Below, piece by piece: positions 1-32,257 of a DNA stretch of 39,059 nt. This DNA is from Octopus bimaculoides (taxonomy: Eukaryota). Numbering within the stretch: position 1 is the first letter of the stretch; each line of letters begins with the position of its first letter. The notes beneath the pieces are model-generated. The model saw only the letters and a program-made list of their open reading frames with translations, made no database searches and was not told the origin of the DNA. The position numbers were made by a program, and so were the translations under genes. The stretch is taken from the NCBI RefSeq assembly GCF_001194135.2, contig NC_068990.1, positions 86,076,908 to 86,115,966 of the forward strand. Reading direction: 5' to 3'.

Positions 1-232
1 GGCACATAAAAGACACCATTTCGAGCGTGGCCGTTTTCGTGCGGGTGACACGTAAAAGCACCCACTACACTCTCTGAGTGGTTGGCGTTAGGAAGGGCAT
101 CCAGCTGTAGAAACTCTGCCAAATCAGACTGGAGCCTGGTGTTGCCATCCGGTTTCACCAGTCCTCAGTCAAATCGTCCAACCCATGCTAGCATGGAAAG
201 CGGACGTTAAACGATGATGATGATGATGATGA
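1..232 (+). mobile_element. (GAT)n-tailed dispersed repeat (retroposon 3' end/SINE), young-looking copy
   Basis: Shared body (ggttggcgttaggaagggcatccagctgt...aacccatgctagcatgg) and GAT tail; at least 8 related copies in the window. Confidence 0.85.
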
Positions 233-378: not shown

Positions 379-425
379 ATCCACTTGAATGCCCATGGTT
401 CATATTCAAATATTGATGTCGACAG
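379..425 (+). CDS. JmjC/EF-hand/HEEL gene, first in-window exon (IHLNAHGSYSNIDVD-R); upstream exons lie outside the window
   Basis: Acceptor tttctccctgtag|ATC and donor AG|gtaatt. Phase 0 start and phase 2 end join in frame to exon 2298 (AG+A=Arg). SNIDVD fits the S-x-VD motif preceding the last JmjC strands. Confidence 0.75.
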
Positions 426-751
426 GTAATTAAAATACTAAAATATTCTTTATAATATTTATTAATGATTTTCTTGCACAGATACACTCTTAATTGAATT
501 ATTTCTTTATACTACCATAAATTTGTATAGAAGCTTCTAAAAATTATTATCAGACTTGAAATATCATACAGTTCCTCTTAAATTTCTGTGTTCTATGAAT
601 TTATTGGTTGGCATCCTTTTTGTCGTGGGAGACAATGGAGTTGCGCATAAAATAATCTAGTCCGGTTTTTACATTTCATGTCCTAATGCATCTCCTGCTG
701 TGGCTGTGTTGTCCTATTCTGGACAAACACTCCCTTTGGCAGGTGCTGCAA

Positions 752-910
752 ATGTAGTACTTTGATCTTTGCTAAATTAACTCTAAGGCCCTTTGATTGT
801 AGACCTTGCTTCCACACCTGAAATTTCTTTTCTAGTTCTGGTAGTGATTCAGCAATAAAAACAAGATCGTCAGCATAAAGGAACTCCCAGGGGCAGCCAG
901 TGTTAAATTC
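752..910 (-). mobile_element. Non-LTR retrotransposon (RTE-like) reverse transcriptase fragment
   Basis: Translates EFNTGCPWEFLYADDLVFIAESLPELEKKFQVWKQGLQSKGLRVNLAKIKVL, containing YADD and GLxVNxxK motifs. Confidence 0.88.
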
Positions 911-1099
911 CTCTCACACACACACATACACACATATGCACACACATTCATATATATATATGTATATCAGCAAATCATGTGAGATCGTAGCCGTGGCCAA
1001 TGCTTGTGTCGCATAACCGGCCTGTTTAAAAGTACCCTTCAATTGTTGAGTAATATGGTGTGCAGGAGAAGACCTGTTGAGTCAAGCAAAATCATTGTC

Positions 1100-1450
1100 A
1101 TAGCTAATGCCAGTGTTGCATGACTTGCACCTGTGCTGGTGGCACATAAAAAGCACCATTTGAGCATGGTCGATGCCACTGCCGCCTGACTGGCTCCCGT
1201 GTCAGTGGCACGTAAAAAACACCATATGAGCGTGGTCAATGCTAGTGCTGCCTGACTGGCTCCCATGCCGGTGACACATAAAATGCATCCACTACACTCT
1301 TGGAGTGGTTGGCATTAGGAAGGGCATCCAACTGCAGAAACATTGCAGATCAGATTGGAGCCTGGCGCAGCCCTTGGCTTGCCAGTTCTCAGTCAAACCA
1401 TCCAACCCATGCCAGCAAAGAAAGTGGACGTTAAATGATGATGATGATGA
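1100..1450 (+). mobile_element. (GAT)n-tailed element with about 2.8 internal 66-bp units
   Basis: Units start at 1141, 1207 and 1273, followed by the shared body and GAT tail. Confidence 0.85.
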
Positions 1451-1749
1451 AAGATATACATAAGCATACATATATATAAATATATTTGACATCATCATCA
1501 TCATCATCATTGATGTAGTCACCATTTGAACACCTGTTTTGTTCCTGTTGACATAAGTGTTTCAGAATGTTAGTTTGTCACATCAACCAATAAATACCAT
1601 TTTCTAATTCAACATTCTTGTCCAACAATCTGACATGTTGTAATTACAATTGCAATCTAACTTCCCAGCCTGTGTGTTTGTCTTTCATGGGAAATTAAGT
1701 TTTATGAGTTATTTCCATTAAAAAAATTAAAAAAAGCATTTTAATAACA

Positions 1750-2010
1750 TCATCATCATCATCATCATCGTTTAACGTCCGTTTTCTATGCTGGCATGGG
1801 TTGGACTGTTTGACTGAGGTCTGGGGAGCCAGTGGCTGCACCAGGCTCCAGTCTGATCTGGCAATGTTTCTACAGCTGGATGCTCTTCCTAATGCCAACC
1901 ACTCTGAGAGTGTAGTGGGTGCTTTTTTACGTGCCACTGGCACGGGAGCCAGTCAGGGGGTACTAGCATCGGCCACGTTTGGATGGTGCTTTTCACGTGA
2001 CACCAGCATA
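1750..2010 (-). mobile_element. (GAT)n-tailed element, reverse copy
   Basis: Begins (CAT)n-cgtttaacgtccg; reverse complement of the family body. Confidence 0.85.
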
Positions 2011-2297
2011 TATATATATATTTGCTTCCTAACCATTATTTCAGTCCTACTGCATGGCACCTTGGGTGTCTTTTGCTATAGCCCTAGGTCAACCAATGCC
2101 TTGTGGATGCATTGCATTTGCAAGAGGGAAACTAAAAGAAGCACTATTGTGTGTGTGTGCGTGTGCACTCACATGAGTGTGTGTGTGTGTGTGTGTTTAC
2201 ATCTGCCTCTAATCATCTAATCTACCACTACAACTCGTTTTAATTAACTTTGTTTCTGAAACAAATCAATTAATTGTGTTCCATTTTATCTTTTCAG

Positions 2298-2390
2298 AAT
2301 GGATTACACCCAAAACCCTGAACTGGCTGAGATTGAGTATCACCTGGGCAACATGACTTCAGGGGACTGTCTTTACATCCCCTACCTATG
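2298..2390 (+). CDS. JmjC gene exon (MDYTQNPELAEIEYHLGNMTSGDCLYIPYL-W)
   Basis: ttttcag|A and TG|gttagt. Contains the GDxLYIPxxW motif of JmjC/cupin_8 domains. Confidence 0.9.
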
Positions 2391-2514
2391 GTTAGTTCTT
2401 GTTATTTTTTTTTTACAACATCTAACACGATAGTAGAATGTGACCCTTTCTGTGGTAAAAGGCAAGTTTTGGTGAGAGGTGACCTACAGCGGTGGTGGGA
2501 GATGTTTTCTCTCC

Positions 2515-2645
2515 TTGTTTCTTTCTGTGTTCCTTTCTGTTGAAGAGCGTAGGCTCGAAACATTAAAGACTTTCTCTATTCCTGAGCATTATACTAATAC
2601 ATCCATTTGTTGTTTACACCACCTGTCTTCGTCTGTTGTTTTTTC
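2515..2645 (+). mobile_element. Short dispersed repeat resembling a Penelope-like terminus (tgaagagcgtaggctcgaaac)
   Basis: Reverse-complement homologue at 23555-23820; class assignment is inference. Confidence 0.55.
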
Positions 2646-2655
2646 ATGAATTCTC

Positions 2656-2692
<37 letters not shown>

Positions 2693-2976
2693 TACATACA
2701 CACACACACTATATCCATCTTTTTATCTGTCAAGTTCTCTCTCTCTCTNNNNNNNNNNNNNNNNNNNNNNNNNNNNNNNNNNNNNNNNNNNNNNNNNNNN
2801 NNNNNNNNNNNNNNNNNNNNNNNNNNNNNNNNNNNNNNNNNNNNNNNNNNNNNNNNNNNNNNNNNNNNNNNNNNNNNNNNNNNNNNNNNNNNNTATATAT
2901 ATATATATATGTACACACACTTACACACACTTTTACAAACACTTACTTATATTCTAAATATTGTTCTGTATATCAG

Positions 2977-3153
2977 GATCCACCAGGTCCGTTCTTATGG
3001 AAGCAATCTGGCTGTTAATGTCTGGTGGAATAATTCCAAAAACCACCTCATTGATGTCAACAAGTGCTTGAAGCCGTGTAGATATGATCTCACTTTGGCA
3101 GATGTGAGCTTTTCCTTTAGAGAGGATGACAATGATGACCTGACCGACTTTCA
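2977..3153 (+). CDS. JmjC gene exon (IHQVRSYGSNLAVNVWW...DDLTDF-Q)
   Basis: tatcag|G and CA|gtgagt. Completes W-I-H-Q-V-R-S (distal Fe-ligand His) and AVNVWW, the end of the JmjC fold. Confidence 0.92.
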
Positions 3154-3628
3154 GTGAGTATGTCTTTCGTTGGTTCTTATATCATTCACACTCATTCTGA
3201 AATATTTTAATCTGATTCTTGACAGCTAATGTTGCAAGTATTCTTGAAACAAATCTTGAAATATTTTACACAAACTTTTAACAGCTTGCAATGACATATA
3301 CTGTATTTTAGCTTGTATAATTTGTCAAAAATTAGGTTAAAAAATATGGGAGTTTCTTATACATGGATAGTATTAGAACAATTGCCACTAGGTTTTTGTT
3401 TTCTTTCTCCAAAAAGAGGGAAATTTCACTGAATTGTTTTAACTGAATTATGCAAATTCATACATTAGTCTATCTGTTTTTTTTTTTCGTGTTTTCTTTT
3501 ACACAACTGATTTTATTTTAAAATTATACCAGTGTTTTTGAACTGTAGACAGACTCCCTATCAATTCAGGTTAATTGGATCCCTTTTTGCATCTGTTGGA
3601 CTAAACGTATTATGTTAATTTCTTTCAG

Positions 3629-3698
3629 AAATAGAATGTTTGATATAGCCGAAACGAAAGACATTGAATTGGATGATATGAAACTCGTTCTGTTTGGG
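3629..3698 (+). CDS. JmjC gene exon (NRMFDIAETKDIELDDMKLVLFG), possible degenerate EF-hand
   Basis: tctttcag|A and GGG|gtaagt. Phases 2 and 0 match the neighbouring exons; open frame. Confidence 0.8.
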
Positions 3699-4050
3699 GT
3701 AAGTAACACCATGAAGCCTACATTAATTAATTAATGTGTGTGTGTGTGCATGCAAACATGCAAGGTAATATTTCCCAATAGGTAGAGCTGTTTTTCACAT
3801 TAGAGTTACAAAATGAACAACACTGCTTGTATGATGATGATGGTTCACTGCATTTACAGTGACAAAAGTAACAAGGGATTGTCTATATGCTATGGGTGGA
3901 ACAAATACCACACAGCATTTTTATTCAAATGCATATTTTTTTTTCAGTTTTATCCTCAATGTTTACATTTTTTGTTGATGTACTTCGTCAAAAGATAAAC
4001 ATGCTCACAGATACACAATTAACAAGCAGCAATCCTTCTTAATGTTCCAG

Positions 4051-4116
4051 GAGGAATTCACCCAAGAGCTGGAGCAGATGAACGCCGGTTACGGATATGT
4101 AGCCCATATAAAAAAG
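4051..4116 (+). CDS. JmjC gene exon (EEFTQELEQMNAGYGYVAHIKK)
   Basis: gttccag|GAG and AAG|gtaagg. 66 nt, phase 0/0, open. Confidence 0.8.
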
Positions 4117-4642
4117 GTAAGGCATTTATCTTCAGATGCCTTAGACATGCATTAGTATTGTCATCGTCCTCCTCATCATCATCGTCATCATCATCATTTT
4201 CATCATCGTCATCATTTTCATCATCGTCATCATCATCATCATCATTTTCATCATTGTCATCATCATCATTTTCATCATTGTCATCATGTTATTGGCTTTA
4301 AAAGATATTGACATAAAATGATTTTTGACACGAAATGATATTTTGGCATTAAATGTTTGTTGACATTAAAATGTTTTTGACAAATGATATTTGACATTGA
4401 ATGTCATTTGATGTTAAATGATATTTGACAATAGATAATATTCAACATTAAAACATCATTTTATGATAGAAACGGAAAACCCTTCCGCTGACATCTGCAA
4501 TGAGTCTTGTCTCAAATTGCTGCTTAATATCAACAACATTGAAATCATAGAAGTTTAGTCATAAAATTAATATAACAAAGTTGAGAGCAAGTTTTGTTAC
4601 AATATTGTTAAGACTATTTTTTCCTGTCTTTTCTTGTGCCAG

Positions 4643-4714
4643 TTATTTCAAAAATTTGATTTGAATGGAGATTTGAAGATCACCGAAGAAGAACTGAAAT
4701 CTCTACTGGATGTG
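4643..4714 (+). CDS. JmjC gene exon with canonical EF-hand (LFQKFDLNGDLKITEEELKSLLDV)
   Basis: cttgtgccag|TTA and GTG|gtatgt. Loop DLNGDLKITEEE matches D-x-N-x-D-x-x-I-x-x-x-E. Confidence 0.88.
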
Positions 4715-5143
4715 GTATGTGTCTTTTAACTACAAATGTTTCAGTTTACATTTAGGGTAGACACTTGGCCGTTGCCAGTACCGCCTGACTGGCCTTCGTG
4801 CGGGTGACACATAAAAGCACCCACTACACTACTTGAGTAACTCCCAGGCCATCATGGCTTGTACCCACAACAAACTCTCTGTAGAAATCTAATATTATTT
4901 TCCTGCTGACAGCATTGTCCAACAGGTGGTGTACTGTGAGAGCCAAGCAGTTCTTGTATGATTAGTACATTAACTGCTGTGTTATAGGTTTGTTAACTAT
5001 ACTATACTGTGTTATACCATACTACCATGTATATAATTGTTAACTGATGTATAAACTCTTGGATTTGGTTGATGGTAATTATAAATTGGTGTTGTGTGAT
5101 TATTAATCTATATTTAAGAGATGAGGAATTATGTACAATATTT

Positions 5144-5238
5144 ACATTATTTACATTTGACGGATATTTGTCCTACGCCATATGCTCACTGGCATATGGC
5201 ATAGTGGTTAAGATTCCGAGTTCGATTCCAAGCAGTGA

Positions 5239-5286
<48 letters not shown>

Positions 5287-5426
5287 CATCGAAAAATACC
5301 TTAGGTATGAGAACCCAGGTTCAAAATTTCCCTAAGACACCTGATGACGGCTGGAGGGTATATCAGCCGAAACGTTGTTAACAACAAACAAGGTGAGGAC
5401 TAATACCCGTCAAATGTAAATAATGT
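5144..5426 (+). mobile_element. Fold-back element: 31-bp terminal inverted repeats, tRNA-like A/B boxes, (AAT)n and a hammerhead-like core
   Basis: 5144-5174 versus 5396-5426 inverted (2 mismatches); TGGCATAGTGG 5197-5207; GAGTTCGATTCC 5218-5229; CTGATGA 5341-5347; GAAAC 5369-5373. Confidence 0.7.
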
Positions 5427-5564
5427 TCTAATTGTTAGCTAATGTGTTGATTTGTTGGTGTTGTGTGATTATTAATGATTTAATTGGAAGATATCAACTG
5501 ATGTTTCTGTTGATTCTCCCTCTACTTGCTTCTGACTTTTTATATTTTGTCTCTTTCATTTCAG

Positions 5565-5657
5565 ACATGGGAAGAGTGTATGGATCTTATCATTGACCTT
5601 AGCCATCTCATCGAGGCTATCCAAAAAACATCGAAAATGTCACATGAAGAATTATGA
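5565..5657 (+). CDS. JmjC gene terminal exon (TWEECMDLIIDLSHLIEAIQKTSKMSHEEL*)
   Basis: Long pyrimidine tract tttcatttcag|ACA. TGA at 5655-5657; ends in HEEL, a KDEL-like signal. Confidence 0.85.
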   Translation, partial: TWEECMDLIIDLSHLIEAIQKTSKMSHEEL

Positions 5658-7186
5658 ATGGCCTGTCTCTTCTAGGGACTAACTTGAGGTGGAAATGGTC
5701 TAAAATCTCACTCGCTGCATTATAGGCAATTCATCACAAAATATTTATGGGTCAAACAAACCTTTCATGAACTTCATCCCAAAACATTTAGATATTTAAT
5801 GTCTCAATTAACCCTCATCAATCAGAATTTCTTTGTAGGGGGAAAGCAAAAGAAATATGCAGCTCAGCCCAATGTTAAATTTATATCTTGGGTAAGAATT
5901 TCAAATTTAAATTTCTATGAAAAAATTTGGGGTTTTCCTTTTTAAATTTTTCAGAAGTGGGTGTTTGATCCTTCATTTATTTATTTATATTTTTAATTAC
6001 CTACTGAGGAGAGAAAGGCAGTGCCCATGGCCCTTTACGGAGCCCCTGTGATTCGAGTGGAGGGACAGAGTGTATCTTCAAATCAGAGATATGATCTGAA
6101 TGCTTGCTGTAGAATTGCCTCTGTTAAAGGTACCCGTGGACTAGGTGGTGATGTTAACCTGGACATCATATTGTGTCTGTGACCTTGTGTGTTCCTTCAT
6201 CATTGTCACAAACCCTTTTTGGAGCATTTATAGAATTGTTTTTATTTTTTTGAATGGTGGCTTAGCAAAAATACTTTTATTTTGCACATATGCTTTTGTA
6301 AAAAGAACAATAAACACATTAAAACATCTTTCAAGTTTCCTTTTGTACCTGATACAATGTGCGTGTACATACATACACAGATGTTTCTGTTTGTGCTTTT
6401 ATATATATATATATAAATATATATATATCAATATANNNNNNNNNNNNNNNNNNNNNNNNNNNNNNNNNNNNNNNNNNNNNNNNNNNNNNNNNNNNNNNNN
6501 NNNNNNNNNNNNNNNNNNNNNNNNNNNNNNNNNNNACACTTGAAATGCTTACCTGCTTAAGTTGTGTTGTAACTTTGCTAATTAAAAAATTAAAAATTAT
6601 TTCTTTAATGTATACATTTTAGATTTTTGTTTTGAATTTTTATCTTAATTTGAACCATGTATAATATTCATGGATATATATATATATATGTACTGGGGTC
6701 GATCTAATCAGCTGGCCCCCTCCCCCAAAATTTTGGGCCTTGTGGCTTTCTCAGTAGCAGCAAGCCACAAAACCCGCAGTTTCTTGTGAGTATATGATAG
6801 AAAAGGTATCCAACCATAGAAAATCTGCCTCAATAAATTGTCCAACCCATGCAAGCATGGACAAGTGGACATTAAAATGATAAAGCAGAATCCATACAGA
6901 TTATGAATGGCTGACATTTCCGCTGGAGTTTGGTGCCTCATAGAATAAGATATCCACATTCTTCACAACAATATTTGAATTTAAAATGGAAGTGCCATGC
7001 TCATTGTTATACTTGATATTCAAACTAGGACATCTGTGTTGAAAATGTGGCCAGGAAGGAGACTAAGAAAAAATGGTCATCTTTTATGCATTCACAATAT
7101 TGACAATTACAAAGACAGAAATAATAATAAAACAAAAAGGTTTGTAATTAGATTTTGTGATTTTCTTTCTTTATTGACAATCTCAA

Positions 7187-12768: not shown

Positions 12769-13452
12769 NNNNNNNNNNNNNNNNNNNNNNNNNNNNNNNN
12801 NNNNNNNNNNNNNNNNNNNNNNNNNNNNNNNNNNNNNNNNNNNNNNNNNNNNNNNNNNNNNNNNNNNNNNNNNNNNNNNNNNNNNNNNNNNNNNNNNNNN
12901 NNNNNNNNNNNNNNNNNNNNNNNNNNNNNNNNNNNNNNNNNNNNNNNNNNNNNNNNNNNNNNNNNNNNNNNNNNNNNNNNNNNNNNNNNNNNNNNNNNNN
13001 NNNNNNNNNNNNNNNNNNNNNNNNNNNNNNNNNNNNNNNNNNNNNNNNNNNNNNNNNNNNNNNNNNNNNNNNNNNNNNNNNNNNNNNNNNNNNNNNNNNN
13101 NNNNNNNNNNNNNNNNNNNNNNNNNNNNNNNNNNNNNNNNNNNNNNNNNNNNNNNNNNNNNNNNNNNNNNNNNNNNNNNNNNNNNNNNNNNNNNNNNNNN
13201 NNNNNNNNNNNNNNNNNNNNNNNNNNNNNNNNNNNNNNNNNNNNNNNNNNNNNNNNNNNNNNNNNNNNNNNNNNNNNNNNNNNNNNNNNNNNNNNNNNNN
13301 NNNNNNNNNNNNNNNNNNNNNNNNNNNNNNNNNNNNNNNNNNNNNNNNNNNNNNNNNNNNNNNNNNNNNNNNNNNNNNNNNNNNNNNNNNNNNNNNNNNN
13401 NNNNNNNNNNNNNNNNNNNNNNNNNNNNNNNNNNNNNNNNNNNNNNNNNNNN
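12769..13452. other. Assembly gap (others at 2749-2893, 6436-6535, 22216-22240, 27809-27968, 29941-30312, 37659-37959)
   Basis: Runs of N, mostly abutting SSRs or repeat copies. Exon phases join across the intragenic gaps, so no coding exon is needed inside them. Confidence 0.98.
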
Positions 13453-18354: not shown

Positions 18355-18500
18355 ACCATCATTATTTAACATATGTTTTCCATGCTGGCATGGGTTGGAT
18401 GGGTTGACAGGATCCAACAAGCTGCAGAGCTGCGTCAGGCCCTAATGTCATCTTTGTCAGTTTCCATAGCTGGACGCCCTTCCTAATGTTGATCACTTTA
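18355..18500 (-). mobile_element. (GAT)n-tailed element, diverged reverse copy
   Basis: ttccatgctggcatgggttggatggg...cccttcctaatg family body. Confidence 0.7.
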
Positions 18501-18751
18501 TAAAGTTCACTGGATGCATTTTTGTTCATGACAATAGCCACTAACACAGTCACCAAGTGTTTTGCAAGATAAATGAAAGGAAATGGCAAACGTTGCTTCA
18601 ATTTAGAGGGACTGCATTTGAGAATGGGAGGTGGCTTTATGCCAGATGTTGAATGTTAAAGTGTGACAGCGGGGGACAAGCACAGGCTTTTTGCCATAGA
18701 GAAGATACATGGCTACCTCCGCATTATATGAGGATGGGTAAGAGTAGCTGA

Positions 18752-19563: not shown

Positions 19564-20223
19564 CTGGAACCAAATGGAAAACAAGATATATAAATCACTG
19601 AGAAAGTTATGTTTATAAGTTGAAAAAATTTGCAAATTTCCACAAAATATCCTTATAGCTATGATCATTATCAGAGCTAACTTGTATCAGAATGAGATAT
19701 CTTGTAGGTGATGAGAACATCTGTGCATGGGGTCCACAGATAAAAAAATGGTTAAGAGCCTTTGGTTTATATGATGTAAGTCTTGGAATTGCTTACATGA
19801 CTGACTACGAGTAGTTGATAAGGTAAAAACAGTAGCTAAATCTCATATCATATCTATGCTATACCGATAGGTGAAAAATTGAGGAAAGGAATTTGAATTC
19901 AATGCAGCAAACTAGTGGAACATCTGTTCATACAGTGTGCTCCCTCTTGCTATAGACATCATCTTTATTCTTTGATTCCTTTAATTGCATCAGTCATTGG
20001 ACTGTGGCGATGCATGAGCATTGACCAAACCAACCCCGGTACTTATTTCAAATCTGGTATTTATTGTGTTCGTCTCTTTTGTCAAATTGCTGTTACAGGG
20101 ACATACACAAACCAACACTGGTTGTCACATGGTGGAGAGACAAACGCAAAGTCATTATTTACAGAAACTAGAGACTACTTAGGTTAGTTGAAAAGAAGCA
20201 GTGAAAATGAAACTGTTAAGAGT

Positions 20224-20226
<3 letters not shown>

Positions 20227-20306
<80 letters not shown>
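20227..20306. repeat. (GA)n microsatellite, about 80 bp; other long SSRs include (AAT)n 5243-5283, (ATT)n 12638-12690, (CAT)n 4160-4290 and many (TA)n/(CA)n
   Basis: Read directly from the sequence. Confidence 0.95.
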
Positions 20307-20311
<5 letters not shown>

Positions 20312-20352
20312 GGAGAGATATATAGAGATGATTTTTGAGCAAAACCACTGAC

Positions 20353-20532
20353 CACTTTTGAGACATTTTGCCACTGTGCCATTCCAAGTGCCATTTGATG
20401 AACAGAGCAGCTGGTGGGCATGGAAATGTGTGAAGCCTGGGTCACACTGGAACAAGGCATAATCGCCTGGTAAATGACCACTGATGGTCATATTACCATT
20501 CTCCAAGAACTCAATTGAAGGACATCGAATTT
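20353..20532 (-). CDS. SUSD2/Mesh-like exon, Sushi/CCP domain (IRCPSIEFLENG...FQCDPGF...LCSSNGTWNGTVAKC)
   Basis: tgtttcag|AA and G|gtcagt. Four Cys plus the conserved Trp of Sushi domains. Confidence 0.93.
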
Positions 20533-21028
20533 CTGAAACAATAAAATTGAAAGGATATATTTAATACATAGCTGGGTTTTTTAAAAATTTGATTTGTGAC
20601 TTTTGTTTTAATTTATATATTCTTTTATTCTTTTACTTGCTTCAATCATTGGACTGCAGCCATGTTGGGGGTTTAGTTGATCAAATCAATACCAATATTT
20701 ATTTTAAGCCTGGTTCTTAAGCCAGTATTTCAACATTTACCAACAGCATAACTCACACACGAAGGGAGAGAATCCCTACATAATCATTTGACTAATTAGA
20801 AACAGCAACACAATTCTATCAAATCACATGCCACCGTCTTAAAACAAGAAGGACACATTGGACAATGTAGACCCTGATAAACAGACAGATAGGGTGGTCA
20901 AAGCTGGAGTGTGTTTGATTATTGGCCTGTTCAATCAGGACTGATCCAGGATCAAACAGGCAACACATCATTGAAATATCATTTGAAATACAAAGTCTAC
21001 TAATGAATTGTCAGGCACGGAAACTTAC

Positions 21029-21277
21029 CAATTTCTATGTCTTTTTTGAGGGCTGAAAATTTAGCCACAAAGTTCTTTATAGCCAAGGCAACTGATGGCT
21101 TCCCAATAACCTGAAAGTCAAATCGACAAGGTGCTACATCCCCACAGAGCTTAATGGTGCCATTTCGAAGGTTGTTTTCATCCAGTTTGTCGATGAAAAC
21201 TGGTTGGTAATTGTCTTCTTCTGGCGTTGCTGGTTTGTAGGACTTGGAAAACAAACTGTCTTTCGCTGCAACCCTCC
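21029..21277 (-). CDS. SUSD2/Mesh-like exon, post-vWD Cys region (SLFS...YQPVF...LCGDVAPCRFDFQVIG...)
   Basis: catcaacag|GG and G|gtaagt. CGD...C.FD...G pattern of SUSD2/MUC4. Confidence 0.9.
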
Positions 21278-21710
21278 CTGTTGATGAAAATCAAAGTAGT
21301 CCATTGTTTATCATTGGTGAAACACATTTGTAAAATTAAGATATTTTGTATGACATGAAGAGAGGTGAAGAAAATCCTAATATTGCATGCAGAGATAGGT
21401 TAGGACTAGAAATGAGAAATGGTTTTGGAAGGATGTAAAGAATAAAATTGAGTGACATGTGTGGAGTGTTGTAAAAGAAGTTGGAAAACTGTTCTTTGTC
21501 AGACATCAGAATTTACTTAATCTCTCCTCACAGCATGTAAACTTATCTTATTTCATAAATCTTATCAACGGTTTTGCTTGTTAGTGGCACAAAATTTCCC
21601 ACTTATCTAATTCACTAATCTGGTCCATGAAATTTTCCAAGGGTGTTGGGGAAGATAACAACAACAACAACAACAACAATATATAAAGTTAAGTAACAGT
21701 GTGAACTTAC

Positions 21711-21836
21711 ATGTATTACCAAATTTATAATGGATGTCCTCCATACTGGAACTGGTTGGTATTATGGTTCCATCTCGTGCTCTGAAGTCATCTGATATGT
21801 TGCCATTATAGTTACCTAGCAACCCTTCTACATTGT
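21711..21836 (-). CDS. SUSD2/Mesh-like exon, vWD end (NVEGLLGNYNGNISDDFRARDG...HYKFGNT-W)
   Basis: ttctcaccag|AC and T|gtaagt. GLLGNYNG..xDDF motif. Confidence 0.93.
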
Positions 21837-22127
21837 CTGGTGAGAAAGCAAAATACAAATAAATTTACTCTGTGTGTGTGTGTGTGTGTGTGTGTATACA
21901 TATGTGTCAACATGAAACAGAAAACACAGAAAGAGACATAAGAATTCTGGAGCAAAACACTTCATCTCATGCTGCTTTATGATCACTTTGGCATCTAATG
22001 TGTGGCACACTTTGTACCTGGACAGGGAATGTCAATTTGGTCACTGTAAGCAAATCATCTGTGCAGGTTGTTGAGCGAGAAATTGCAGAATGCTAACCTG
22101 TTGTCTATTGTCTATGGCAAGAATGTC

Positions 22128-22198
<71 letters not shown>

Positions 22199-22314
22199 CA
22201 TATATATACATATATNNNNNNNNNNNNNNNNNNNNNNNNNTATATATATATTTAAAATACAGAGATGCCTATAATAGGACATCTAACCCTGCCCTATGAT
22301 TTATTAATAATGTG

Positions 22315-22350
<36 letters not shown>

Positions 22351-22369
22351 GTCAGGTGCCCCTGCAGGA

Positions 22370-22665
22370 GTCCTGTGCAGGTGCCATGTAAAAAGCACCC
22401 ATGCCAATGCTACATGAAAGTGCCTGTGTGATGTCAGGTAAAAATACCATGCAGTGCTAGCCATGTGAAAATTCTCATGTGGTGCCACATAAAAAGCAAC
22501 CAGCTCACTTTGTAAAGTGGCTGGCATTAGGAAGGGCATCCAGCAGTAGACACCAAATCAAATCGGACTGGAACTTGATTAGGGTATTGGTGCAGCTCTG
22601 CTTGCCAGCTCTGGTCAAACTGTCCAACCCATGCCAGCATGGAAAATGGACATTAAATGAACAAA
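22370..22665 (+). mobile_element. (GAT)n-family element with degenerate upstream subunits
   Basis: ggcattaggaagggcatccagc...aacccatgccagcatgg body, preceded by repeated gccatgtaaaaagcacc-like units. Confidence 0.75.
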
Positions 22666-23208
22666 AATAGTGTTAACATATTTAATGCAGGGATTATTAA
22701 AGACTCAACTAGAGATAATTATGTTGTGTGAAAAGAAACATTAATCACTGACTCCTATCATTTTACATTTCAGATAAGTATGAGAAACAACTCTTTCTAT
22801 ATTTCAGCTTTATTATGACCTCATTAGCAAAGTAGAGACTCCACTGTACTTTATGAGAGAATCACAAGTATAAGAGATAGAGTTGAGTAACATAATGGTA
22901 ACAGTGTTTTTATAGGATACACACACACGTATCGTTGATAACCCCACTGTTAATGGATGAGGAAACCCTGCATTACACTGATAACAACAACACAAATGAA
23001 TTCAGAGAACCTCTACACAGCTACTTGGCTTACAAGAAATAGTAACCATATTGTTCTAAAAATCTCACATACCATCTGAAAGAGAATGACACAAGGGAAT
23101 GTGTAGACGCAGTAACAATGTGCGTGTGTGGGGGTGTGATTGTTAAAATTAGGTATGCTTAATTAGCGCTGACCTAGTTGGCAGTAAATAAGAATGAAAA
23201 ATACTTAC

Positions 23209-23352
23209 TTCTTAAAGCTTTTGATCCCATCAGAACAAGAATATTCATGACGTCAGGAGTGACCTCAATTTCAATAGAGAGTTCGTGAGAAGAGAAGACA
23301 ACCATTATGTCTGTGGAGTTCTCATGGTTCTCATGGATGTTGATTGTCAGTC
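23209..23352 (-). CDS. SUSD2/Mesh-like exon, vWD (GLTINIHE...VVFSSHELSIEIEV...MNILVLMGSKALR)
   Basis: tctgttacag|GA and A|gtaagt. 144 nt, phase 1/1, open. Confidence 0.88.
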
Positions 23353-24083
23353 CTGTAACAGAGAAACAGAAGTTAAGAGTGGAGTTAATATTGTTGGGGA
23401 GTGACTGGTCTATAACTGGTAAAAGTTAGTATAGTGAGATTGGGGTTAATATAAAAAAAAAGAGGGCATCTGTAATACTGAAATGACCTGGTATAATACA
23501 CTAGAGTAAAGCTAGGTATGATAATACAGTAGTTAGTTGAGATTTACAAAAAAAAAAAAAACAAAGACGGGTGTGTAAACAACAAACAGATGTATTAGTT
23601 TAACGCTCGGGAAGTGAGAAAGTCTTTACATTTCAGATAAGTATGAGAAACAACTCTTTCTTTATTTCAGCCTTATGATGTCCTCATTAGCAAAGTAGAG
23701 ACTCCACTGTACTTTATGAGAGAATCACAAGTATAAGAGATAGAGTTGAGTAACATAATGGTGAGAAAGTCTTTTATGTTTTGAACCTATGCTCTTCAAC
23801 AGAAAGGAAGACAGAAATAAGCAGAGAGAGAAAATACAAAAGGTTTAGTGGTTAGTGATCAATCATGGCGAATGCCGGACAGAGGTGGTCAGACAAGAGA
23901 GCTAGGAAGAAGGGGAGATAAATAAAAGTAGTGGTGATCCCAAAACGAAGGTGCACGTGCGTGTGCATATGAGAGCATGTATGTGCATGTGGATAGGGCC
24001 TGGTGACCTTGATGTGTGTGTGTGCATGTGTAGGTTTGTGGATGATGGTGTGGGTGCTGGGAAGTGGTCGGTGCTAGTGTAAA

Positions 24084-24197
24084 CCAATACCTTTGACCAC
24101 CCAGCTGGTAGTCCAATACCTTTAACCACCCAACTGGAAGCCCAATATGTTAACCACTCAGCTGGTCATCTAACAACCCAGCTGGTACTGTTTTTGT
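24084..24197. repeat. 29-bp minisatellite (ccaatacctttaaccacccagctggtagt), about 3.5 units; second array at 24437-24506
   Basis: Unit starts at 24084, 24113, 24142 and at 24442, 24471. Confidence 0.85.
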
Positions 24198-24571
24198 AGA
24201 GCTGACTGCAACAATATGATATAGAAGTGTTGGCCATGGCATCACAATGCAATCGATTGGACAGCAGAGTAGAGATGGCCATAACAGTACAGGAGAGCTG
24301 GCTCTGAGGAATTTTTTATGACAGTATAATACAGTAAATGCCATTATAACAGGCACATCTTTAAAAATGGTAATTTATACAAAACTAGAAACATAAAAAA
24401 GATGCTTGTATTGGATTTAAATCAAAATCCCCTGCTGTAGTCCAATACCCTTAACCACCCAGCTGGTAGCCCAATATGTTTACCACTCAGCTGGTACTGT
24501 TTTTGTTTCTGTTCTGGTCCCCAACCATTGAAACAGAATCTCCCACAAAACCATCAAATTTCAAATCTTAC

Positions 24572-24721
24572 CTTGAAATTCAAGTTTTTCATATTTATAT
24601 TCTTTCTCATCAAGCAGCAGTCTATAATTAGTCTGCTCATTAATTTCAATTTCAATTATTTCTGATATGCCTTTCATTTTCATAGCTATCCCAGTAAACA
24701 CCGTGGCATTTTGTAGTTTAT
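24572..24721 (-). CDS. SUSD2/Mesh-like exon, vWD (KLQNATVFTGIAMK...EKLEFQ)
   Basis: aatcacag|AT and G|gtaaga. 150 nt, phase 1/1; ATVFTGIA matches SUSD2/MUC4-type vWD. Confidence 0.88.
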
Positions 24722-25989
24722 CTGTGATTCAAAACAAACAAACAATTACACAACATATTTTCATGTGGTCATCAATAGTGTATCATTATGTAAATACATT
24801 ATATTTTAGTAAATAAATTTCAGTTATTTATGGTTGGTATTTTTGGAAGGTTAGTTGTTCCTAATTTATTGGTAAATAACAATGAAATCATGGGTTTCAT
24901 GGGTTCGATCCTCACTCCAAGCTATGAGATAGGTAGCTATGGGTTTTGTTTCCCCAGCAAGATTAAATACATATAAATGTGTCTATATATTTATTAATTA
25001 AAAAATGAAATGGTGTTAACATGTTGAATGCAGGGATCATTAAAGATGTGTGGTGAGGAAAACAATATTGGTTATTGACTAATAGTGTTTTACATTTCAG
25101 ATAACTATGAGAGACAACTCTTGCTATATTTCAGCCTTATCATGACCTTGTTAGTGAAGCAGAGACTTCATTGTACTTCATGAGAGAATCACTAAATAAA
25201 TGTATGAGACAATATACACTGATGAATGATCAACACACTCCAGCATACAATTCAAGCTGGACCGCTCCATAACACACTTAATTTAAGTATCATTGACTTC
25301 AGTAAGCAGGAAAAACTGCAGAGTATTCCAAGGCTATTTCATTAGCTTCACATGCCAAGTTCAACTCCACAAGTCTAACATCAGTATGGTCACACAACCT
25401 GAAAGAAATAACAGCAAAATCTCCCTCAAATCATACTTTGTTGTCTTAAAATTAAATAAAAAACGTTGGATAATAAAATCCAAGATAAACAACAAGATTA
25501 GATGGCCAGGACTGTAATCTTTGATCATAAGTCTACTCAACCAAAGTTAACTCTAGGTTAAACTACTACTACAATTTTGGAATGAGATGAACTCCACTAA
25601 GCCAACTTGTGCTTCCTACTCAATGGAGAAGGAGTGTTGAGTGATGTATAATCTACTGAACTATTAGTCTCAGCACCAAAATTTTCTTTCTCCCATTCAC
25701 TACAGAGACCTTGAGTTTGCTAAAAATCCAGCAAAATTTTTACAGTTCACCAGAACACACAGCTCTGGTATTTATCATAGGTTTTGGAAGTGTTAATTGA
25801 ACAGATGGAGATGAACTTATATATCACAGATAGGAAACTGGACTGTCATCAAAAACTTTGCCCATACAATGAACTGAACTCAGCACAGCAAGTCAACAAA
25901 GTAGAGAGATGTCACATTACAGTAGTGAATCATCTCACCCTGTAGTGCCTACATACAGCCAAGTGGACTGGGTTGTATGTAGTTTAGTC

Positions 25990-26195
25990 ATTGATTGATC
26001 CTTCTTGAGTCACTTCGACTCATAAGGCTGGCTTCCTGTTTTTTGTGACATGTATATCCCCCACTGGACAGGGCGTTGTCTGTTGCAGGATTACTCACGT
26101 TTACCAGCTGAGTAACATGGCTAGTCAAGGAATCGAAACCACAATTTTACAATTATGAGTCCAACACCCCTAACCACTAAGCCACGTGCCTCCAC
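25990..26195 (-). mobile_element. tRNA-derived SINE family C
   Basis: Box A TGGCTTAGTGG (26184-26174) and box B GGTTTCGATTCC (26140-26129) at tRNA-like spacing. Confidence 0.7.
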
Positions 26196-26329
26196 AGTTA
26201 ATCATTGATACAATACACTAAACTCTATCCTATCACTTTGTGGGCTGTCGATGGTTAAATGACTTAATCACTGACACAGCACAATGAACTACAAAGCTTT
26301 GTACTTACTTAAGCTGGTCACTCTCTACG

Positions 26330-26625
26330 AAGCAGAGGCCAGCAATGACCTCTGTCTTCTATTGTTCTCAACTCCGGACTGTCTTCACTTTCTCCCCCAA
26401 GTTTCATCCTCATCAGTTCTTTTGCATCTTTGTTTAGTCTTTTTCTAACTAGCAGGTGTTGGCCTGACACAAACCCATTTTACCTCCGGGAAGAGGTGGT
26501 CCATATTCGTCTGGCCCCTATCCTTTGACCTGTCCAGCATGGGAGGCCCTTCCTGGAGCTTGTGGCTCCGCTGGCATAGCTCTCGGGGTCACTGAGGCAC
26601 ACAAGCCACCACACCGCAGCAAGGA
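26330..26625 (-). mobile_element. Short RTE-related non-autonomous element (5'-end-like motif gaccccgagagctatgcc)
   Basis: 26455-26625 is homologous to 32779-32950; motif resembles RTE/BovB 5' UTRs (from memory). Confidence 0.55.
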
Positions 26626-26974
26626 CTGGACCTTGTGGTGGGACGCACTTTTGCGGTACCTACTAACAGCTAAGTACCACAGTTGATAGCTGTGTGTCAT
26701 GGCTAGTGATACAACTGAGTGGTACCTACGTACAGTCAGGCAGACTGGAAGTTGATAGTTACATGATCTTTTCAGTAATACAGCACAATGCTGCTCAGAT
26801 GATTTAAACCGGACATTTTGGCTGGTAGTTTTGGTCAGTTATTGTATCTCTAAGAGAAAGGGGTAAAATGGTTCCATTAACTCAGTTTGTGAATTTAAAG
26901 CATTGTTTTAATCAATGGTTCCCAACAAGGGTTCATATGCCTCCAAGGGCCATATGGAACCCATATAGTCCTCA

Positions 26975-27465
26975 GTTTTCATCATCATCATCGTCATCGT
27001 TTAACATCCGTTTTCTATGCTGGCATGGGTTGGACGGTTTGACTGAGGTCTGGCAAGCCACAAGGCTGCACAAGGCTCCAATCTGATCTGACAAGGTTTC
27101 TACAGCTGGATGCCTTTCCTAATGCCAACCACTCCGAGAGTGTAGTGGGTACTTTTTACATGCCACAAGCACAAGGGCCAGTCAGGCGGTACTAGCATCG
27201 ACCACTCTCAAATGGTGCTTTTTATGTGCCACCAGCATGGGAGCCAGTCAGGTGCCACTGGCAATGATCACGCTTGAATGGTACTTTTTACGTGCTACCA
27301 GCATGGGAGACAGTCAGGCAGTACTGAAATTGGTCATGCCCAAATGCTGCTTTTTATGTGCCACTGGCACAGGAGCCAGTCAGGCCACACTGGCAGGGAT
27401 CATGCTCAAATGGTGCTTCTTACGTGCCACTGGCATGGGTGCCAGTCAGGTGGCACTGGCATCTG
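26975..27465 (-). mobile_element. (GAT)n-tailed element with about 4.5 internal 66-bp units
   Basis: Unit starts at 27162, 27228, 27294, 27360 and 27426. Confidence 0.88.
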
Positions 27466-27513
27466 CTCCGACAATAGCTTAGTTATGTTGTTAAAATTTC
27501 TGTGCATTTAACT

Positions 27514-28110
27514 TTCTTTTACTTGTTTCAGTCATTTGACTGCGACCATGCTGGAGCACCGCCTTTAGTCGAGCAAATTGACCCCGGGACTTATTCTTTG
27601 TAAGCCTAGTACTTATTCTATCGGCCTCTATTGCCGAACTGCTAAGTGACGGGGACATAAACACACCAGCATCGGTTGTCAAGCAATGCTAGGGGGACAA
27701 CCACAGACACACACACATATCATCATCATCATCGTTTAACGTCCGCTTTCCATGCTAGCATGGGTTGGACGATTTGACTGAGGACTGGTGAAACCGGATG
27801 GCAACACCNNNNNNNNNNNNNNNNNNNNNNNNNNNNNNNNNNNNNNNNNNNNNNNNNNNNNNNNNNNNNNNNNNNNNNNNNNNNNNNNNNNNNNNNNNNN
27901 NNNNNNNNNNNNNNNNNNNNNNNNNNNNNNNNNNNNNNNNNNNNNNNNNNNNNNNNNNNNNNNNNNNNCGTCTACCAAATCCACTCACAAGGCTTTGGTC
28001 GGCCCGAGGCTATAGTAGAAGACACTTGCCCAAGATGCCACGCAGTGGGACTGAACCCGGAACCATGTGGTTGGTAAGTGAGCTACTTATCACACAGCCA
28101 CTCTTGCGCC
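27514..28110 (-). mobile_element. tRNA-headed SINE family B, interrupted in its microsatellite by a (GAT)n element (27721-27808+) and a gap
   Basis: Head ggcgcaagagtggctgtgtg...gggttcagtccc; tail cagtcaaatgactgaaacaagtaaaag; comparison with the neighbouring copy at 28204-28498. Confidence 0.8.
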
Positions 28111-28203
28111 TAATATAACTGTTTATATTTAACTGTTTATATTTCTACAATACACAAAATGTTTAAACAAATTTTTTATCCAATTCATAATAAAATTTAA
28201 ACT

Positions 28204-28498
28204 CCTTTACTTGTTTTAGTCATTTGACTGTGGTCATGCTGGAGCACTGCCTTTAGTCGAACAAATCGACCCCAGCACTTATTCTTTATAAACCTAGTAC
28301 TTATTCTATCAGTCTCTTTTGCCAAAACCGCTAATTACAAGGACATAAACACACCAGCATCGGTTGTCAAGCAATGATGGGGAGACAAACACAAACACAC
28401 ACGTATACATGCATACATATATATATATATACATGCCAGGCTTCTTTTCAGTTTCCATCTACCAAATCCATTCACAAGGCTTTGGTTAGCCTGAGGCC
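28204..28498 (-). mobile_element. SINE family B, 5'-truncated adjacent copy
   Basis: Colinear with 27514-28020 without the nested insert. Confidence 0.82.
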
Positions 28499-28926
28499 AA
28501 AACTTATGAAAAGAAGACATTTGTACTACAGAGCCAGAGGTGGTTTTAGCCGGGTTGGTATCGAAAGGGTTAAAAATCAGACACTGTTTTTTTATTAAAA
28601 GTTGGGCACATTGGATAATGTAATCCTAGATACATTATTTCTGCAGAGAAATAAGACAGAGAGTCATGGCTATAATACTTCCAAACAGATCGGTGGAATC
28701 AGAACTGACCTCAGGTCAAACTACAAAAAGAAAGAACAGATTGGTAGTCTTAGAGACACTGTGTCAAGACAATGAAAGACGATCTGGTCCTGACAGTGAA
28801 ACATCTCACTGGAGAGCTGCTGGATTACGGCTGGCCAAGGGCTAAATTCCAACCATAATTAATTATTAATGCTGCTATCAATGAAACACACATCAAATTG
28901 AATGTAAACAAACCAGACATACTCAC

Positions 28927-29070
28927 CATCAATATCACGAGCTTGGGCAGCTCTCACCTGGATCACAACAGATTTGCTTTTGTCCTGCAGCAGAATGAAC
29001 TCACCCAGACCATTGAATGTGTACTTCTTGCCATCTAACGTTACCAGGTGAGGGTCACCAGCTGCCTGCG
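28927..29070 (-). CDS. SUSD2/Mesh-like exon, start of vWD domain (AQAAGDPHLVTLDGKKYTFNGLGEFILL...)
   Basis: ttttcag|CG and G|gtgagt. GDPH..TLDG..YTFNG.GEF is the vWD signature. Confidence 0.95.
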
Positions 29071-29875: not shown

Positions 29876-29940
29876 CAGTGGTTCCCAAAGTGAGCAGTGC
29901 TGCCTCCTTGGGGTTCATTGGAAAGATCCAGCGGGACGGT
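29876..29940 (+). mobile_element. hAT-type MITE left end running into a gap
   Basis: Begins cagtggttcccaaa; similar starts at about 26915 (caatggttcccaac) and 33547 (caggggtcaccaaactttt). Right ends not seen. Confidence 0.4.
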
Positions 29941-30774: not shown

Positions 30775-30949
30775 CTGAAATAGCGACATGAATATTACAG
30801 TTTAGGTTATAGTACAGCAGGGTTAGAACAGTTGTAAGTTATAGCAGAGTATGACACAGTGGTGTGTTAGACACTACAGTAAAACTAAGATCTCCAAAGA
30901 AGAGTATATACCACAGTAAGTAGAATAATGTTCACAGTAAATACATACT

Positions 30950-32168: not shown

Positions 32169-32257
32169 CTGTAATAAAGACAAAGAGATAAATAAATACA
32201 TGTATGTATGTATGTATGTGTATATATATATGTGTGTGTGTGTGTGTGTACATATAT

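What the first reader, a model, noticed from the sequence alone, without database searches (positions are those of the whole stretch)
379..5657. Putative ER-luminal, calcium-binding JmjC oxygenase (JmjC + EF-hand + HEEL)
Seen: seven phase-consistent exons give a JmjC C-terminal half (GDCLYIPYLWIHQVRS...AVNVWW), a canonical EF-hand loop and a C-terminal HEEL. Established: most JmjC enzymes are nuclear or cytosolic; the characterised ER 2OG oxygenases (P4H, P3H, PLOD, AspH) are not JmjC-family; HEEL is an ER-retrieval variant, e.g. in FKBP10. Inference: this could be a secretory-pathway protein hydroxylase under Ca control, an architecture whose function I do not know to be characterised.
Basis: partly seen in the sequence, partly recalled or inferred. 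Interest (0 to 1): 0.72.

Follow-up and report, generated by a model that had tools for sequence, protein, structure and literature searches.

The report
ER-resident JMJD5-like oxygenase gene, octopus
These are the last seven exons of a real, expressed Octopus bimaculoides gene for a JMJD5-like iron/2-oxoglutarate oxygenase that carries a signal peptide, a calcium-binding EF-hand and an ER-retrieval tail. The enzyme family was predicted by computer in 2010, and no biochemical study of it turned up in the literature searches run here.

Summary
Seven AG/GT-bounded exons (379-5657) give a 205-aa frame ending in HEEL. RNA-seq shows every junction. The N gap (2749-2893) is intronic, and reads join exon 2 directly to exon 3. 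The peptide is identical to the C-terminal 205 residues of O. bimaculoides XP_014786508.1 (419 aa). That protein's upstream exons lie outside the window and supply a signal-like N-terminus, a GHxxxhG motif and the HxD iron ligands.

The protein belongs to the "secreted JMJD5-like family" defined in silico by Iyer et al. 2010 (animals only; lost in vertebrates, arthropods and nematodes). Of 159 full-length relatives:
- 92% have a signal-like N-terminus.
- 90% end in a KDEL-type tetrapeptide.
- 77% keep an EF-hand loop.
- All Fe/2OG ligands and four cysteines are at least 96% conserved.

The closest solved fold is the JMJD5 catalytic domain. It is not JMJD8, which has HxH and no EF-hand.

Best reading: a soluble ER-lumen protein hydroxylase whose substrate is unknown. 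Calcium control is untested, and the octopus loop has Leu where Gly is usual. The ER-retrieval tail and EF-hand refine the 2010 "secreted" label. The gene and its family are already on record, so interest is moderate.

The parts
379..425 (+). Coding exon, first in the window and 4th of 10 in the gene. Encodes IHLNAHGSYSNIDVDR (residues 215-230 of XP_014786508.1).
   Evidence: AG/GT sites. RNA contigs and reads cover 377-425. The loose end behind 425 is the start of exon 2. The loose end before 377 reads ...VFVDPKYQDK, matching the orthologue.
2298..2390 (+). Coding exon. Carries the N-M-T sequon (2350-2358) and the conserved GDC cysteine (2368-2370, Cys254), and ends ...IPYLW.
   Evidence: Cys254 is conserved in 97% of 159 relatives.
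2749..2893 (.). Assembly gap (145 N) inside intron 2, flanked by (TA)n/(CA)n microsatellites. It is not coding.
   Evidence: RNA reads join 2390 directly to 2977. Orthologues have the same uninterrupted peptide.
2977..3153 (+). Coding exon. Carries the distal Fe-ligand His (2981-2983, His263, in WIHQV), AVNVWW, the NNS sequon and conserved Cys291 (3065-3067).
   Evidence: His263 is conserved in 98% and Cys291 in 99% of relatives. His263 aligns with JMJD5 His400.
3629..3698 (+). Coding exon: linker and first helix of the C-terminal helical domain.
   Evidence: Joint 3153>3629 seen in 4 runs. The model shows helices from residue 310 on.
4051..4116 (+). Coding exon: second helix of the degenerate first EF-hand-like unit.
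   Evidence: Joint 3698>4051.
4643..4714 (+). Coding exon with the EF-hand: entering helix and loop DLNGDLKITEEE (4658-4693).
   Evidence: Pfam EF-hand_6 at 25.1 bits against a cut-off of 25. The loose end behind 4116 is the start of this exon. Loop ligand positions are conserved in 83-91% of the family.
5565..5657 (+). Last coding exon: final helix, HEEL (5643-5654) and the TGA stop (5655-5657).
   Evidence: HEEL is recorded on an ER-localised human protein in Raykhel et al. 2007 (PMC2140024).
5658..6328 (+). 3' UTR, with an AATAAA signal at 6309-6314.
   Evidence: RNA depth is continuous to about 6328, and contigs from two runs end there. AATAAA position.

Best explanation
The region is the 3' part (7 of 10 coding exons) of the Octopus bimaculoides gene for XP_014786508.1. 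This protein belongs to the animal-only 'secreted JMJD5-like' JmjC family.

Domain order of the full protein:
- a signal-like N-terminus;
- a GHxxxhG motif;
- a JMJD5-type double-stranded beta-helix with a complete Fe(II)/2-oxoglutarate site and four conserved cysteines;
- a helical C-terminal EF-hand pair with one near-canonical Ca loop;
- a C-terminal HEEL.

Inferred mechanism: the protein is translocated into the ER, folded with disulfides, and kept there by KDEL-receptor retrieval through HEEL. In the lumen it uses Fe(II), 2-oxoglutarate and O2 to hydroxylate a side chain on proteins passing through the secretory pathway. Arg or Lys is the first guess, by analogy with JMJD5 and JMJD7. The EF-hand most likely binds lumenal Ca2+ to stabilise the C-terminal domain. 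Ca-dependent regulation is possible but not shown.

Shown here: gene structure, expression, sequence features, family-wide conservation, and fold similarity.
Inferred: localisation, catalysis, Ca binding, substrate.
For: Gene and transcript:
- Exon structure and frame.
- RNA support for every junction and for the HEEL exon.
- Identity to XP_014786508.1 residues 215-419, and placement in GCA_001194135.2.
- Upstream exons carry MFYLFYLSLLLYTSVIFAQ, GHLKKFG and SVIHTD.

Family size: 3620 representatives at E<=1e-3 and 142 at E<=1e-30.

Family features, from 159 full-length relatives:
- 146 have a signal-like N-terminus.
- 143 end in a KDEL-type motif (KDEL 27, HDEL 26, RDEL 19, HQEL 11, KEEL 10, HEEL 9 and others).
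- 123 have an EF-hand loop.

Active site: residues matching JMJD5 Y272, W310, S318, H321, D323, N327, K336 and H400 are each conserved in 96-99% of relatives, and four cysteines in 97-99%.

Fold:
- PDB profile search finds JMJD5 best (6.5e-33), ahead of JMJD7, TYW5 and FIH.
- AlphaFold model of the O. vulgaris orthologue: pLDDT 90.5, pTM 0.83.
- Foldseek best match is the JMJD5 catalytic domain: TM 0.84, rmsd 2.6 A.

Literature:
- Iyer et al. 2010, Table 1, describe exactly this family: GHxxxhG, disulfide cysteines, lost in vertebrates, arthropods and nematodes.
- The taxa among the hits fit that pattern.
- HEEL, KEEL, KTEL and KVEL are listed on ER-localised human proteins.
Against: - No experiment of any kind supports localisation, Ca binding or catalysis.
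- Signal peptides were judged only by a hydrophobicity heuristic. The octopus N-terminus has no basic n-region.
- The octopus EF loop has Leu at position 6, and the O. vulgaris orthologue scores below Pfam EF-hand cut-offs.
- The Argonauta orthologue ends in HLEL, a less typical variant.
- About 10% of full-length relatives lack a KDEL-type end, though some of these may be faulty gene models.
- Iyer et al. predicted action on cell-surface proteins, not ER residence.
- The substrate residue is a guess. JMJD5 residues that bind the substrate arginine could not be mapped reliably.
Confidence: 0.7

Rival explanations
1. It is a truly secreted or cell-surface-acting hydroxylase, as Iyer et al. 2010 predicted for the family. 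On this reading the C-terminal tetrapeptide is only a leaky or regulated retention signal.
For: Iyer et al. call the family 'secreted' and predict hydroxylation of cell-surface proteins. About 10% of full-length relatives lack a KDEL-type end. From general knowledge, some KDEL-bearing proteins do reach the cell surface.
Against: 90% of 159 full-length relatives, from sponges to amphioxus, keep a KDEL-type C-terminus. That is hard to explain without selection for ER retrieval. Fe(II), 2OG and ascorbate are available to ER-lumen oxygenases but are poorly available outside the cell (general knowledge).
Confidence: 0.12
2. It is the invertebrate counterpart of vertebrate JMJD8, the known ER-lumen JmjC protein, and shares its still unclear function.
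For: JMJD8 is a lumenal ER JmjC protein with an N-terminal signal and N-glycans (PMC5684140). This family is absent from vertebrates, so replacement is conceivable.
Against: JMJD8 has HxH instead of HxD and no other domain. This family has HxD in 97-99% of members plus an EF-hand. Iyer et al. list JMJD8 as a separate family found in animals, plants and stramenopiles, in another part of their table. None of the roughly 60 source-named relatives is called JMJD8-like; they are named after JMJD5, TYW5 or JMJD7. The nearest solved fold is JMJD5.
Confidence: 0.05
3. It is a non-catalytic, Ca-binding ER protein: a pseudo-enzyme or chaperone that uses the JmjC fold only for binding.
For: JMJD8 has no demonstrated catalytic activity and may act in protein folding. 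EF-hand plus HDEL-type ends recall the CREC family of ER Ca-binding proteins (general knowledge).
Against: Every Fe and 2OG ligand known from JMJD5 is conserved at 96-99% across the family. That is the pattern of an active enzyme.
Confidence: 0.06
4. It is the octopus orthologue of JMJD5/KDM8 proper, a nuclear/cytosolic arginyl hydroxylase, as the RefSeq product name says.
For: RefSeq names it 'bifunctional peptidase and arginyl-hydroxylase JMJD5'. JMJD5 is the best PDB match.
Against: The match covers only the catalytic domain, at about 25% identity. The protein also has a hydrophobic signal-like N-terminus, conserved cysteines, an EF-hand and HEEL. Iyer et al. separate this family from JMJD5. 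Relatives are named inconsistently as JMJD5-like, TYW5-like or JMJD7-like, which is typical of automatic best-hit naming.
Confidence: 0.03

Closest known systems
Secreted JMJD5-like family (Iyer, Abhiman, de Souza, Aravind 2010, NAR 38:5261; PMC2938197)
   Same: Same family. It is animal-only and absent from vertebrates, arthropods and nematodes. It has the N-terminal GHxxxhG motif, conserved cysteines and a JMJD5-like catalytic domain.
   Different: The paper's main text does not mention an EF-hand, a KDEL-type tail or the ER. It predicts action on cell-surface proteins. The data here point to ER residence (90% KDEL-type ends) and a conserved Ca loop.
JMJD5 / KDM8 (human arginyl C-3 hydroxylase; PDB 4qu1, 6f4p and others)
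   Same: Closest solved fold and sequence: TM 0.84, rmsd about 2.6 A, about 25% identity. Same Fe ligands (H321, D323, H400) and 2OG ligands (Y272, W310, S318, N327, K336).
   Different: From general knowledge, JMJD5 is nuclear/cytosolic, has its own N-terminal domain, and has no signal peptide, EF-hand or KDEL tail. The octopus protein has all three, plus four conserved cysteines.
JMJD8 (vertebrate ER-lumen JmjC protein; Yeo et al. 2017, PMC5684140)
   Same: A JmjC protein of the ER lumen with an N-terminal signal and N-glycans. It is grouped with JMJD5, JMJD7, TYW5, FIH and HSPBAP1 in that paper's tree.
   Different: JMJD8 has HxH rather than HxD and no EF-hand. No KDEL-type motif is reported for it; retention is proposed to be through an uncleaved signal peptide.
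Classical ER-lumen 2OG oxygenases (prolyl 4- and 3-hydroxylases, PLOD lysyl hydroxylases, AspH)
   Same: Same compartment, same cofactors, and the same kind of job: hydroxylating side chains of secretory proteins (general knowledge).
   Different: They belong to other branches of the 2OG oxygenase superfamily, not to the Cupin_8/JmjC branch.
CREC family (reticulocalbins, calumenin, Cab45)
   Same: Soluble secretory-pathway proteins with EF-hands and HDEL, HDEF or HEEF tails (general knowledge). HDEF also occurs in this family.
   Different: CREC proteins have six EF-hands and no enzyme domain. Here there is one good loop attached to an oxygenase.

Membership tests
Secreted JMJD5-like family (Iyer et al. 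2010) | Unique N-terminal GHxxxhG motif | tested here: met
   GHLKKFG is present in XP_014786508.1, in an exon upstream of the window. G, H and G are each conserved in 99% of 159 relatives.
Secreted JMJD5-like family (Iyer et al. 2010) | Conserved (disulfide-bonding) cysteines | tested here: met
   Four Cys are conserved at 97-99% (C162, C196, C254, C291). Two are encoded in the window, at 2368-2370 and 3065-3067. Whether they form disulfides could not be tested.
Secreted JMJD5-like family (Iyer et al. 2010) | Animals only; absent from vertebrates, arthropods and nematodes | tested here: met
   Named hits come from sponge, placozoan, cnidarians, flatworm, annelids, molluscs, brachiopod, bryozoan, nemertean, echinoderms, hemichordates, amphioxus and tunicates. 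None is from a vertebrate, arthropod or nematode. Only the best 120-150 hits were listed, and a few unnamed metagenome or Logan sequences could be from protists.
Secreted JMJD5-like family (Iyer et al. 2010) | JMJD5-like JmjC catalytic domain | tested here: met
   PDB profile search: JMJD5 at 6.5e-33. Foldseek: TM 0.84 to JMJD5.
Secreted JMJD5-like family (Iyer et al. 2010) | N-terminal secretion signal | tested here: inconclusive
   A hydrophobic stretch lies within the first 35 residues in 146 of 159 relatives and in the octopus protein. This is a heuristic only; no SignalP was available.
Fe(II)/2OG-dependent JmjC oxygenase (active enzyme) | HxD/E...H iron triad plus 2OG-binding Lys, Asn, Ser and Tyr | tested here: met
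   H187, D189, H263, K202, N193, S184 and Y141 are present in the octopus protein and conserved at 96-99%. Only H263 lies in the window. Activity itself is not testable with these tools.
KDEL-type ER-retrieval clients | KDEL-like tetrapeptide at the extreme C-terminus of a lumenal protein | tested here: met
   HEEL is followed directly by the stop codon. HEEL is listed on an ER-localised human protein. 143 of 159 relatives end in a KDEL-type motif. Actual retrieval is not testable here.
EF-hand Ca-binding domain | 12-residue loop with ligands at positions 1, 3, 5 and 12, and Gly at position 6 | tested here: inconclusive
   In DLNGDLKITEEE, positions 1, 3, 5, 9 and 12 are correct but position 6 is Leu (family: Gly in 52%). 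Pfam EF-hand_6 passes by 0.1 bit and the other models fall below cut-off. The family profile hits calmodulin at about 1e-7. The model shows a helix-loop-helix pair.
JMJD8 | HxH instead of HxD at the iron site; JmjC domain only | tested here: not met
   The octopus protein has H-T-D and an added EF-hand domain. No JMJD8 sequence was available for a direct alignment.
JMJD5 / KDM8 proper | Intracellular protein with the JMJD5 N-terminal region; Glu in strand N-3, aromatic residue between strands N-3 and N-4, DxxxP in helix N-4 (Iyer et al. 2010) | tested here: inconclusive
   The signal-like N-terminus and HEEL argue against an intracellular protein. The three sequence motifs were not checked. 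Similarity to JMJD5 is limited to the catalytic domain.

The most novel reading that the evidence does not exclude
The family is the missing secretory-pathway hydroxylase behind unusual hydroxylated residues in secreted proteins of marine invertebrates. One example is the 4-hydroxyarginine of mussel adhesive protein Mefp-3; the papers read here name no enzyme for it. On this reading, activity or folding would be tied to ER calcium through the EF-hand. The family is JMJD5-like, and JMJD5 is an arginyl hydroxylase. It is ER-resident, has many copies in bivalves, and is absent from vertebrates, arthropods and nematodes.
Probability: 0.12. Interest if true: 0.75.

Novelty: new member of a known kind. 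Interest (0 to 1): 0.4.

Why it matters
If the in-silico reading is right, many invertebrate animals, from sponges and cnidarians to amphioxus and tunicates, have a JMJD5-type protein hydroxylase working inside the ER. Vertebrates, arthropods and nematodes have lost it.

That would add a JmjC branch to the small set of ER-lumen 2OG oxygenases (P4H, P3H, PLOD, AspH). It would imply an unrecognised hydroxylation of secretory or matrix proteins in these animals. It would also correct both the 2010 label 'secreted' and the RefSeq product name 'JMJD5'.

The family is an orphan enzyme with a clear, cheap route to testing. It is not a new discovery as a gene or as a family.

Tried and rejected
Repeat-free sub-stretches were used instead.
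The signal-peptide exon therefore has no direct read support here. The only indirect support is that the 1927-nt transcript contig extends about 631 nt upstream of window exon 1, close to the 642 nt of upstream coding sequence.
- The first homologue search with the 205-aa fragment found one protein only. The exhaustive representative search and a profile search were needed to find the family.
- A literature search for JmjC + EF-hand + KDEL found nothing. A search for JMJD5-like + secreted + ER found no experimental work on the family.
- JMJD8 orthology was considered and rejected on HxH versus HxD, domain content and published classification. No JMJD8 sequence could be fetched, so no alignment or tree was made.
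- Orthology to JMJD5 proper was rejected (see rival explanations).
- Mapping of the JMJD5 residues that hold the substrate arginine was abandoned. The HMMER alignment around JMJD5 E238-Y243 is ambiguous by two residues.
- The bacterial-style ORF list was uninformative for this intron-rich gene.
- Model coordinates are not returned by the tools, so cysteine pairing could not be checked.

Full report
**What is in the sequence.**
The region holds seven short exons on the + strand: 379-425, 2298-2390, 2977-3153, 3629-3698, 4051-4116, 4643-4714 and 5565-5657. Each has an AG acceptor, and all but the last have a GT donor. Joined, they give one 205-codon frame that ends ...KMSHEEL followed by TGA.

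Pfam places residues 8-68 at the C-terminal end of Cupin_8, the JmjC-type cupin (E = 3.4e-13). It finds one EF-hand at residues 149-174. EF-hand_6 scores 25.1 bits against a cut-off of 25; the other EF-hand models fall just under their cut-offs.

**Is it transcribed as read, and what about the gap?**
Two raw-read RNA-seq runs and two sets of transcript contigs from the same species were laid on repeat-free parts of the region.
- Joints 3153>3629 and 3698>4051 are seen directly in reads and contigs.
- The unaligned read ends at 425, 2391 and 4116 are the first bases of the next exon.
- One 1927-nt contig is collinear with all seven exons. It runs through the HEEL exon to about 6328, just past an AATAAA at 6309.
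- Depth in the HEEL exon matches the other exons, and no competing joint was reported.

The assembly gap 2749-2893 lies in intron 2, between (TA)n and (CA)n runs. Reads join 2390 straight to 2977. The joined peptide IPYLW|IHQV is uninterrupted in two other Octopus species. The gap therefore hides no coding sequence.

**Which gene it is.**
The 205 residues are identical to residues 215-419 of Octopus bimaculoides XP_014786508.1 (UniProt A0A0L8FVL0, 419 aa). In assembly GCA_001194135.2, window position 1 is the first base after a 3,068-N gap. The three upstream coding exons lie on the other side of that gap.

The upstream exons encode:
- a hydrophobic, signal-like start, MFYLFYLSLLLYTSVIFAQ. The ATG is the first in-frame ATG after an upstream stop;
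- the motif PGHLKKFGSG;
- the iron-binding SVIHTD.

The transcript read end upstream of window exon 1 translates to VFVDPKYQDK, as in that protein.

**The family.**
An exhaustive HMMER search found 3620 representatives at E <= 1e-3 and 142 at E <= 1e-30. A profile search with source names found about 120 close relatives.

The relatives come from a sponge, Trichoplax, cnidarians, a flatworm, annelids, many molluscs, a brachiopod, a bryozoan, a nemertean, echinoderms, hemichordates, amphioxus and tunicates. None comes from a vertebrate, arthropod or nematode. Their automatic names disagree with one another (JMJD5-like, TYW5-like, JMJD7-like, uncharacterized). That shows no curated orthologue exists.

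Features of 159 full-length-looking members:

| Feature | Members |
|---|---|
| Signal-like N-terminus | 146 |
| KDEL-type C-terminus | 143 |
| EF-hand loop in the last 150 residues | 123 |
| G-H...G of the N-terminal motif | 99% each |
| Four cysteines | 97-99% each |
| Residues matching the JMJD5 iron and 2OG ligands | 96-99% each |

- The KDEL-type ends include KDEL 27, HDEL 26, RDEL 19, HQEL 11, KEEL 10 and HEEL 9.
- Two of the four conserved cysteines are encoded in the window.
- The JMJD5 ligands matched are Y272, W310, S318, H321, D323, N327, K336 and H400.
- In the EF loop, the calcium-ligand positions 1, 3, 5 and 12 are conserved at 83-91%.

**Fold.**
An AlphaFold model of the O. vulgaris orthologue, 86% identical to the window peptide over the shared part, is confident (pLDDT 90.5, pTM 0.83). 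It shows a beta-rich catalytic domain followed by five helices arranged as a pair of helix-loop-helix units.

Foldseek's best matches are human JMJD5 catalytic-domain structures (TM 0.84, rmsd about 2.6 A, about 25% identity). TYW5, JMJD7 and FIH follow. The sequence-profile search of the PDB gives the same order.

**What is already known.**
Iyer, Abhiman, de Souza and Aravind (2010) list a "Secreted JMD5-like family". [quoted passage not shown] They predict that it hydroxylates cell-surface proteins. That description fits this family point by point, so the family is not new.

Their main text does not mention an EF-hand, a KDEL-type tail or the ER. I found no paper combining JmjC, EF-hand and KDEL, and no experimental work on the family.

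JMJD8 is a different family. It has HxH instead of HxD and no further domain, and Iyer et al. list it separately.

**How it most likely works.**
Shown: the gene, its transcript, its motifs, their conservation, and the JMJD5-like fold.

Inferred:
- The protein enters the ER through its signal peptide.
[quoted passage not shown] HEEL and several of the family's other endings are recorded on ER-localised human proteins.
- It uses Fe(II), 2-oxoglutarate and O2 to hydroxylate a residue on proteins in the secretory pathway.

A KDEL-type end kept in 90% of members across animal phyla argues for ER residence rather than secretion. The substrate is unknown. Arg or Lys is a first guess, by analogy with JMJD5 and JMJD7.

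The EF-hand is probably occupied constantly in the Ca-rich lumen and so is more likely structural than a switch. In octopods the loop has Leu where Gly is usual, so Ca binding in this particular protein is less certain than in the family at large. I put about 0.7 on this overall reading.

**Rivals.**
- A truly secreted enzyme: 0.12.
- A non-catalytic Ca-binding protein: 0.06.
- A JMJD8 counterpart: 0.05.
- JMJD5 proper, as RefSeq names it: 0.03.

**A more adventurous reading.**
Secreted mussel adhesive protein Mefp-3 contains 4-hydroxyarginine, and those papers name no enzyme for it. An ER-resident, JMJD5-like enzyme with many copies in bivalves is a candidate. JMJD5 hydroxylates C-3 rather than C-4, and nothing here links the two, so I give this about 0.12.

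**Verdict.**
The gene is already annotated, although probably misnamed. Its family was described in silico in 2010. What this analysis adds is that the family appears to be ER-retained and carries a conserved Ca loop. Interest is moderate.

Noticed in passing
window 20200-32300, minus strand: Exon-sized ORFs on the opposite strand match AMOP (31745-32257 and 30435-30794), VWD (28862-29176), the Mucin-4-like C8-3 domain (21003-21290) and Sushi (20219-20560). Together they look like a SUSD2 / mucin-4-like secreted-protein gene lying tail-to-tail with the JmjC gene.
   Followed up: partly
window 40-221, 1107-1445, 1761-2003 (inverted), 4773-4835, 18357-18522, 22481-22660, 26990-27463, 37580-37654: There are many copies (73-88% alike) of a roughly 300-bp SINE-like repeat, several of them in introns of the JmjC gene. 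Other short intronic stretches (2505-2644, 3321-3375, 5290-5400) show very high RNA depth with mismatches, which suggests repeats transcribed elsewhere in the genome.
   Followed up: partly
window 1; L002 6694-9761: The window begins at the first base after a 3,068-N gap in assembly GCA_001194135.2. That is why the gene's first three coding exons (signal peptide, GHxxxhG, HxD) are not in the window.
   Followed up: yes
whole gene (XP_014786508.1): The RefSeq product name 'bifunctional peptidase and arginyl-hydroxylase JMJD5' looks like a best-hit misnomer. Relatives in other species are variously named TYW5-like, JMJD7-like, KDM8 or uncharacterized.
   Followed up: partly
window 2749-2893, 6436-6535, 12769-13452, 22216-22240, 27809-27968, 29941-30312, 37659-37959: The window has seven N gaps. 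The two inspected (2749-2893 and 6436-6535) are bordered by (TA)n/(CA)n microsatellites.
   Followed up: no
L001 (Logan contig, 1750 nt), positions 1-150: The first homologue found (P0001, ending HDEL) is N-terminally truncated by its gene call. The same frame continues upstream (…GHGKPFGSERPF…, the GHxxxhG motif) until a stop near the contig start.
   Followed up: partly
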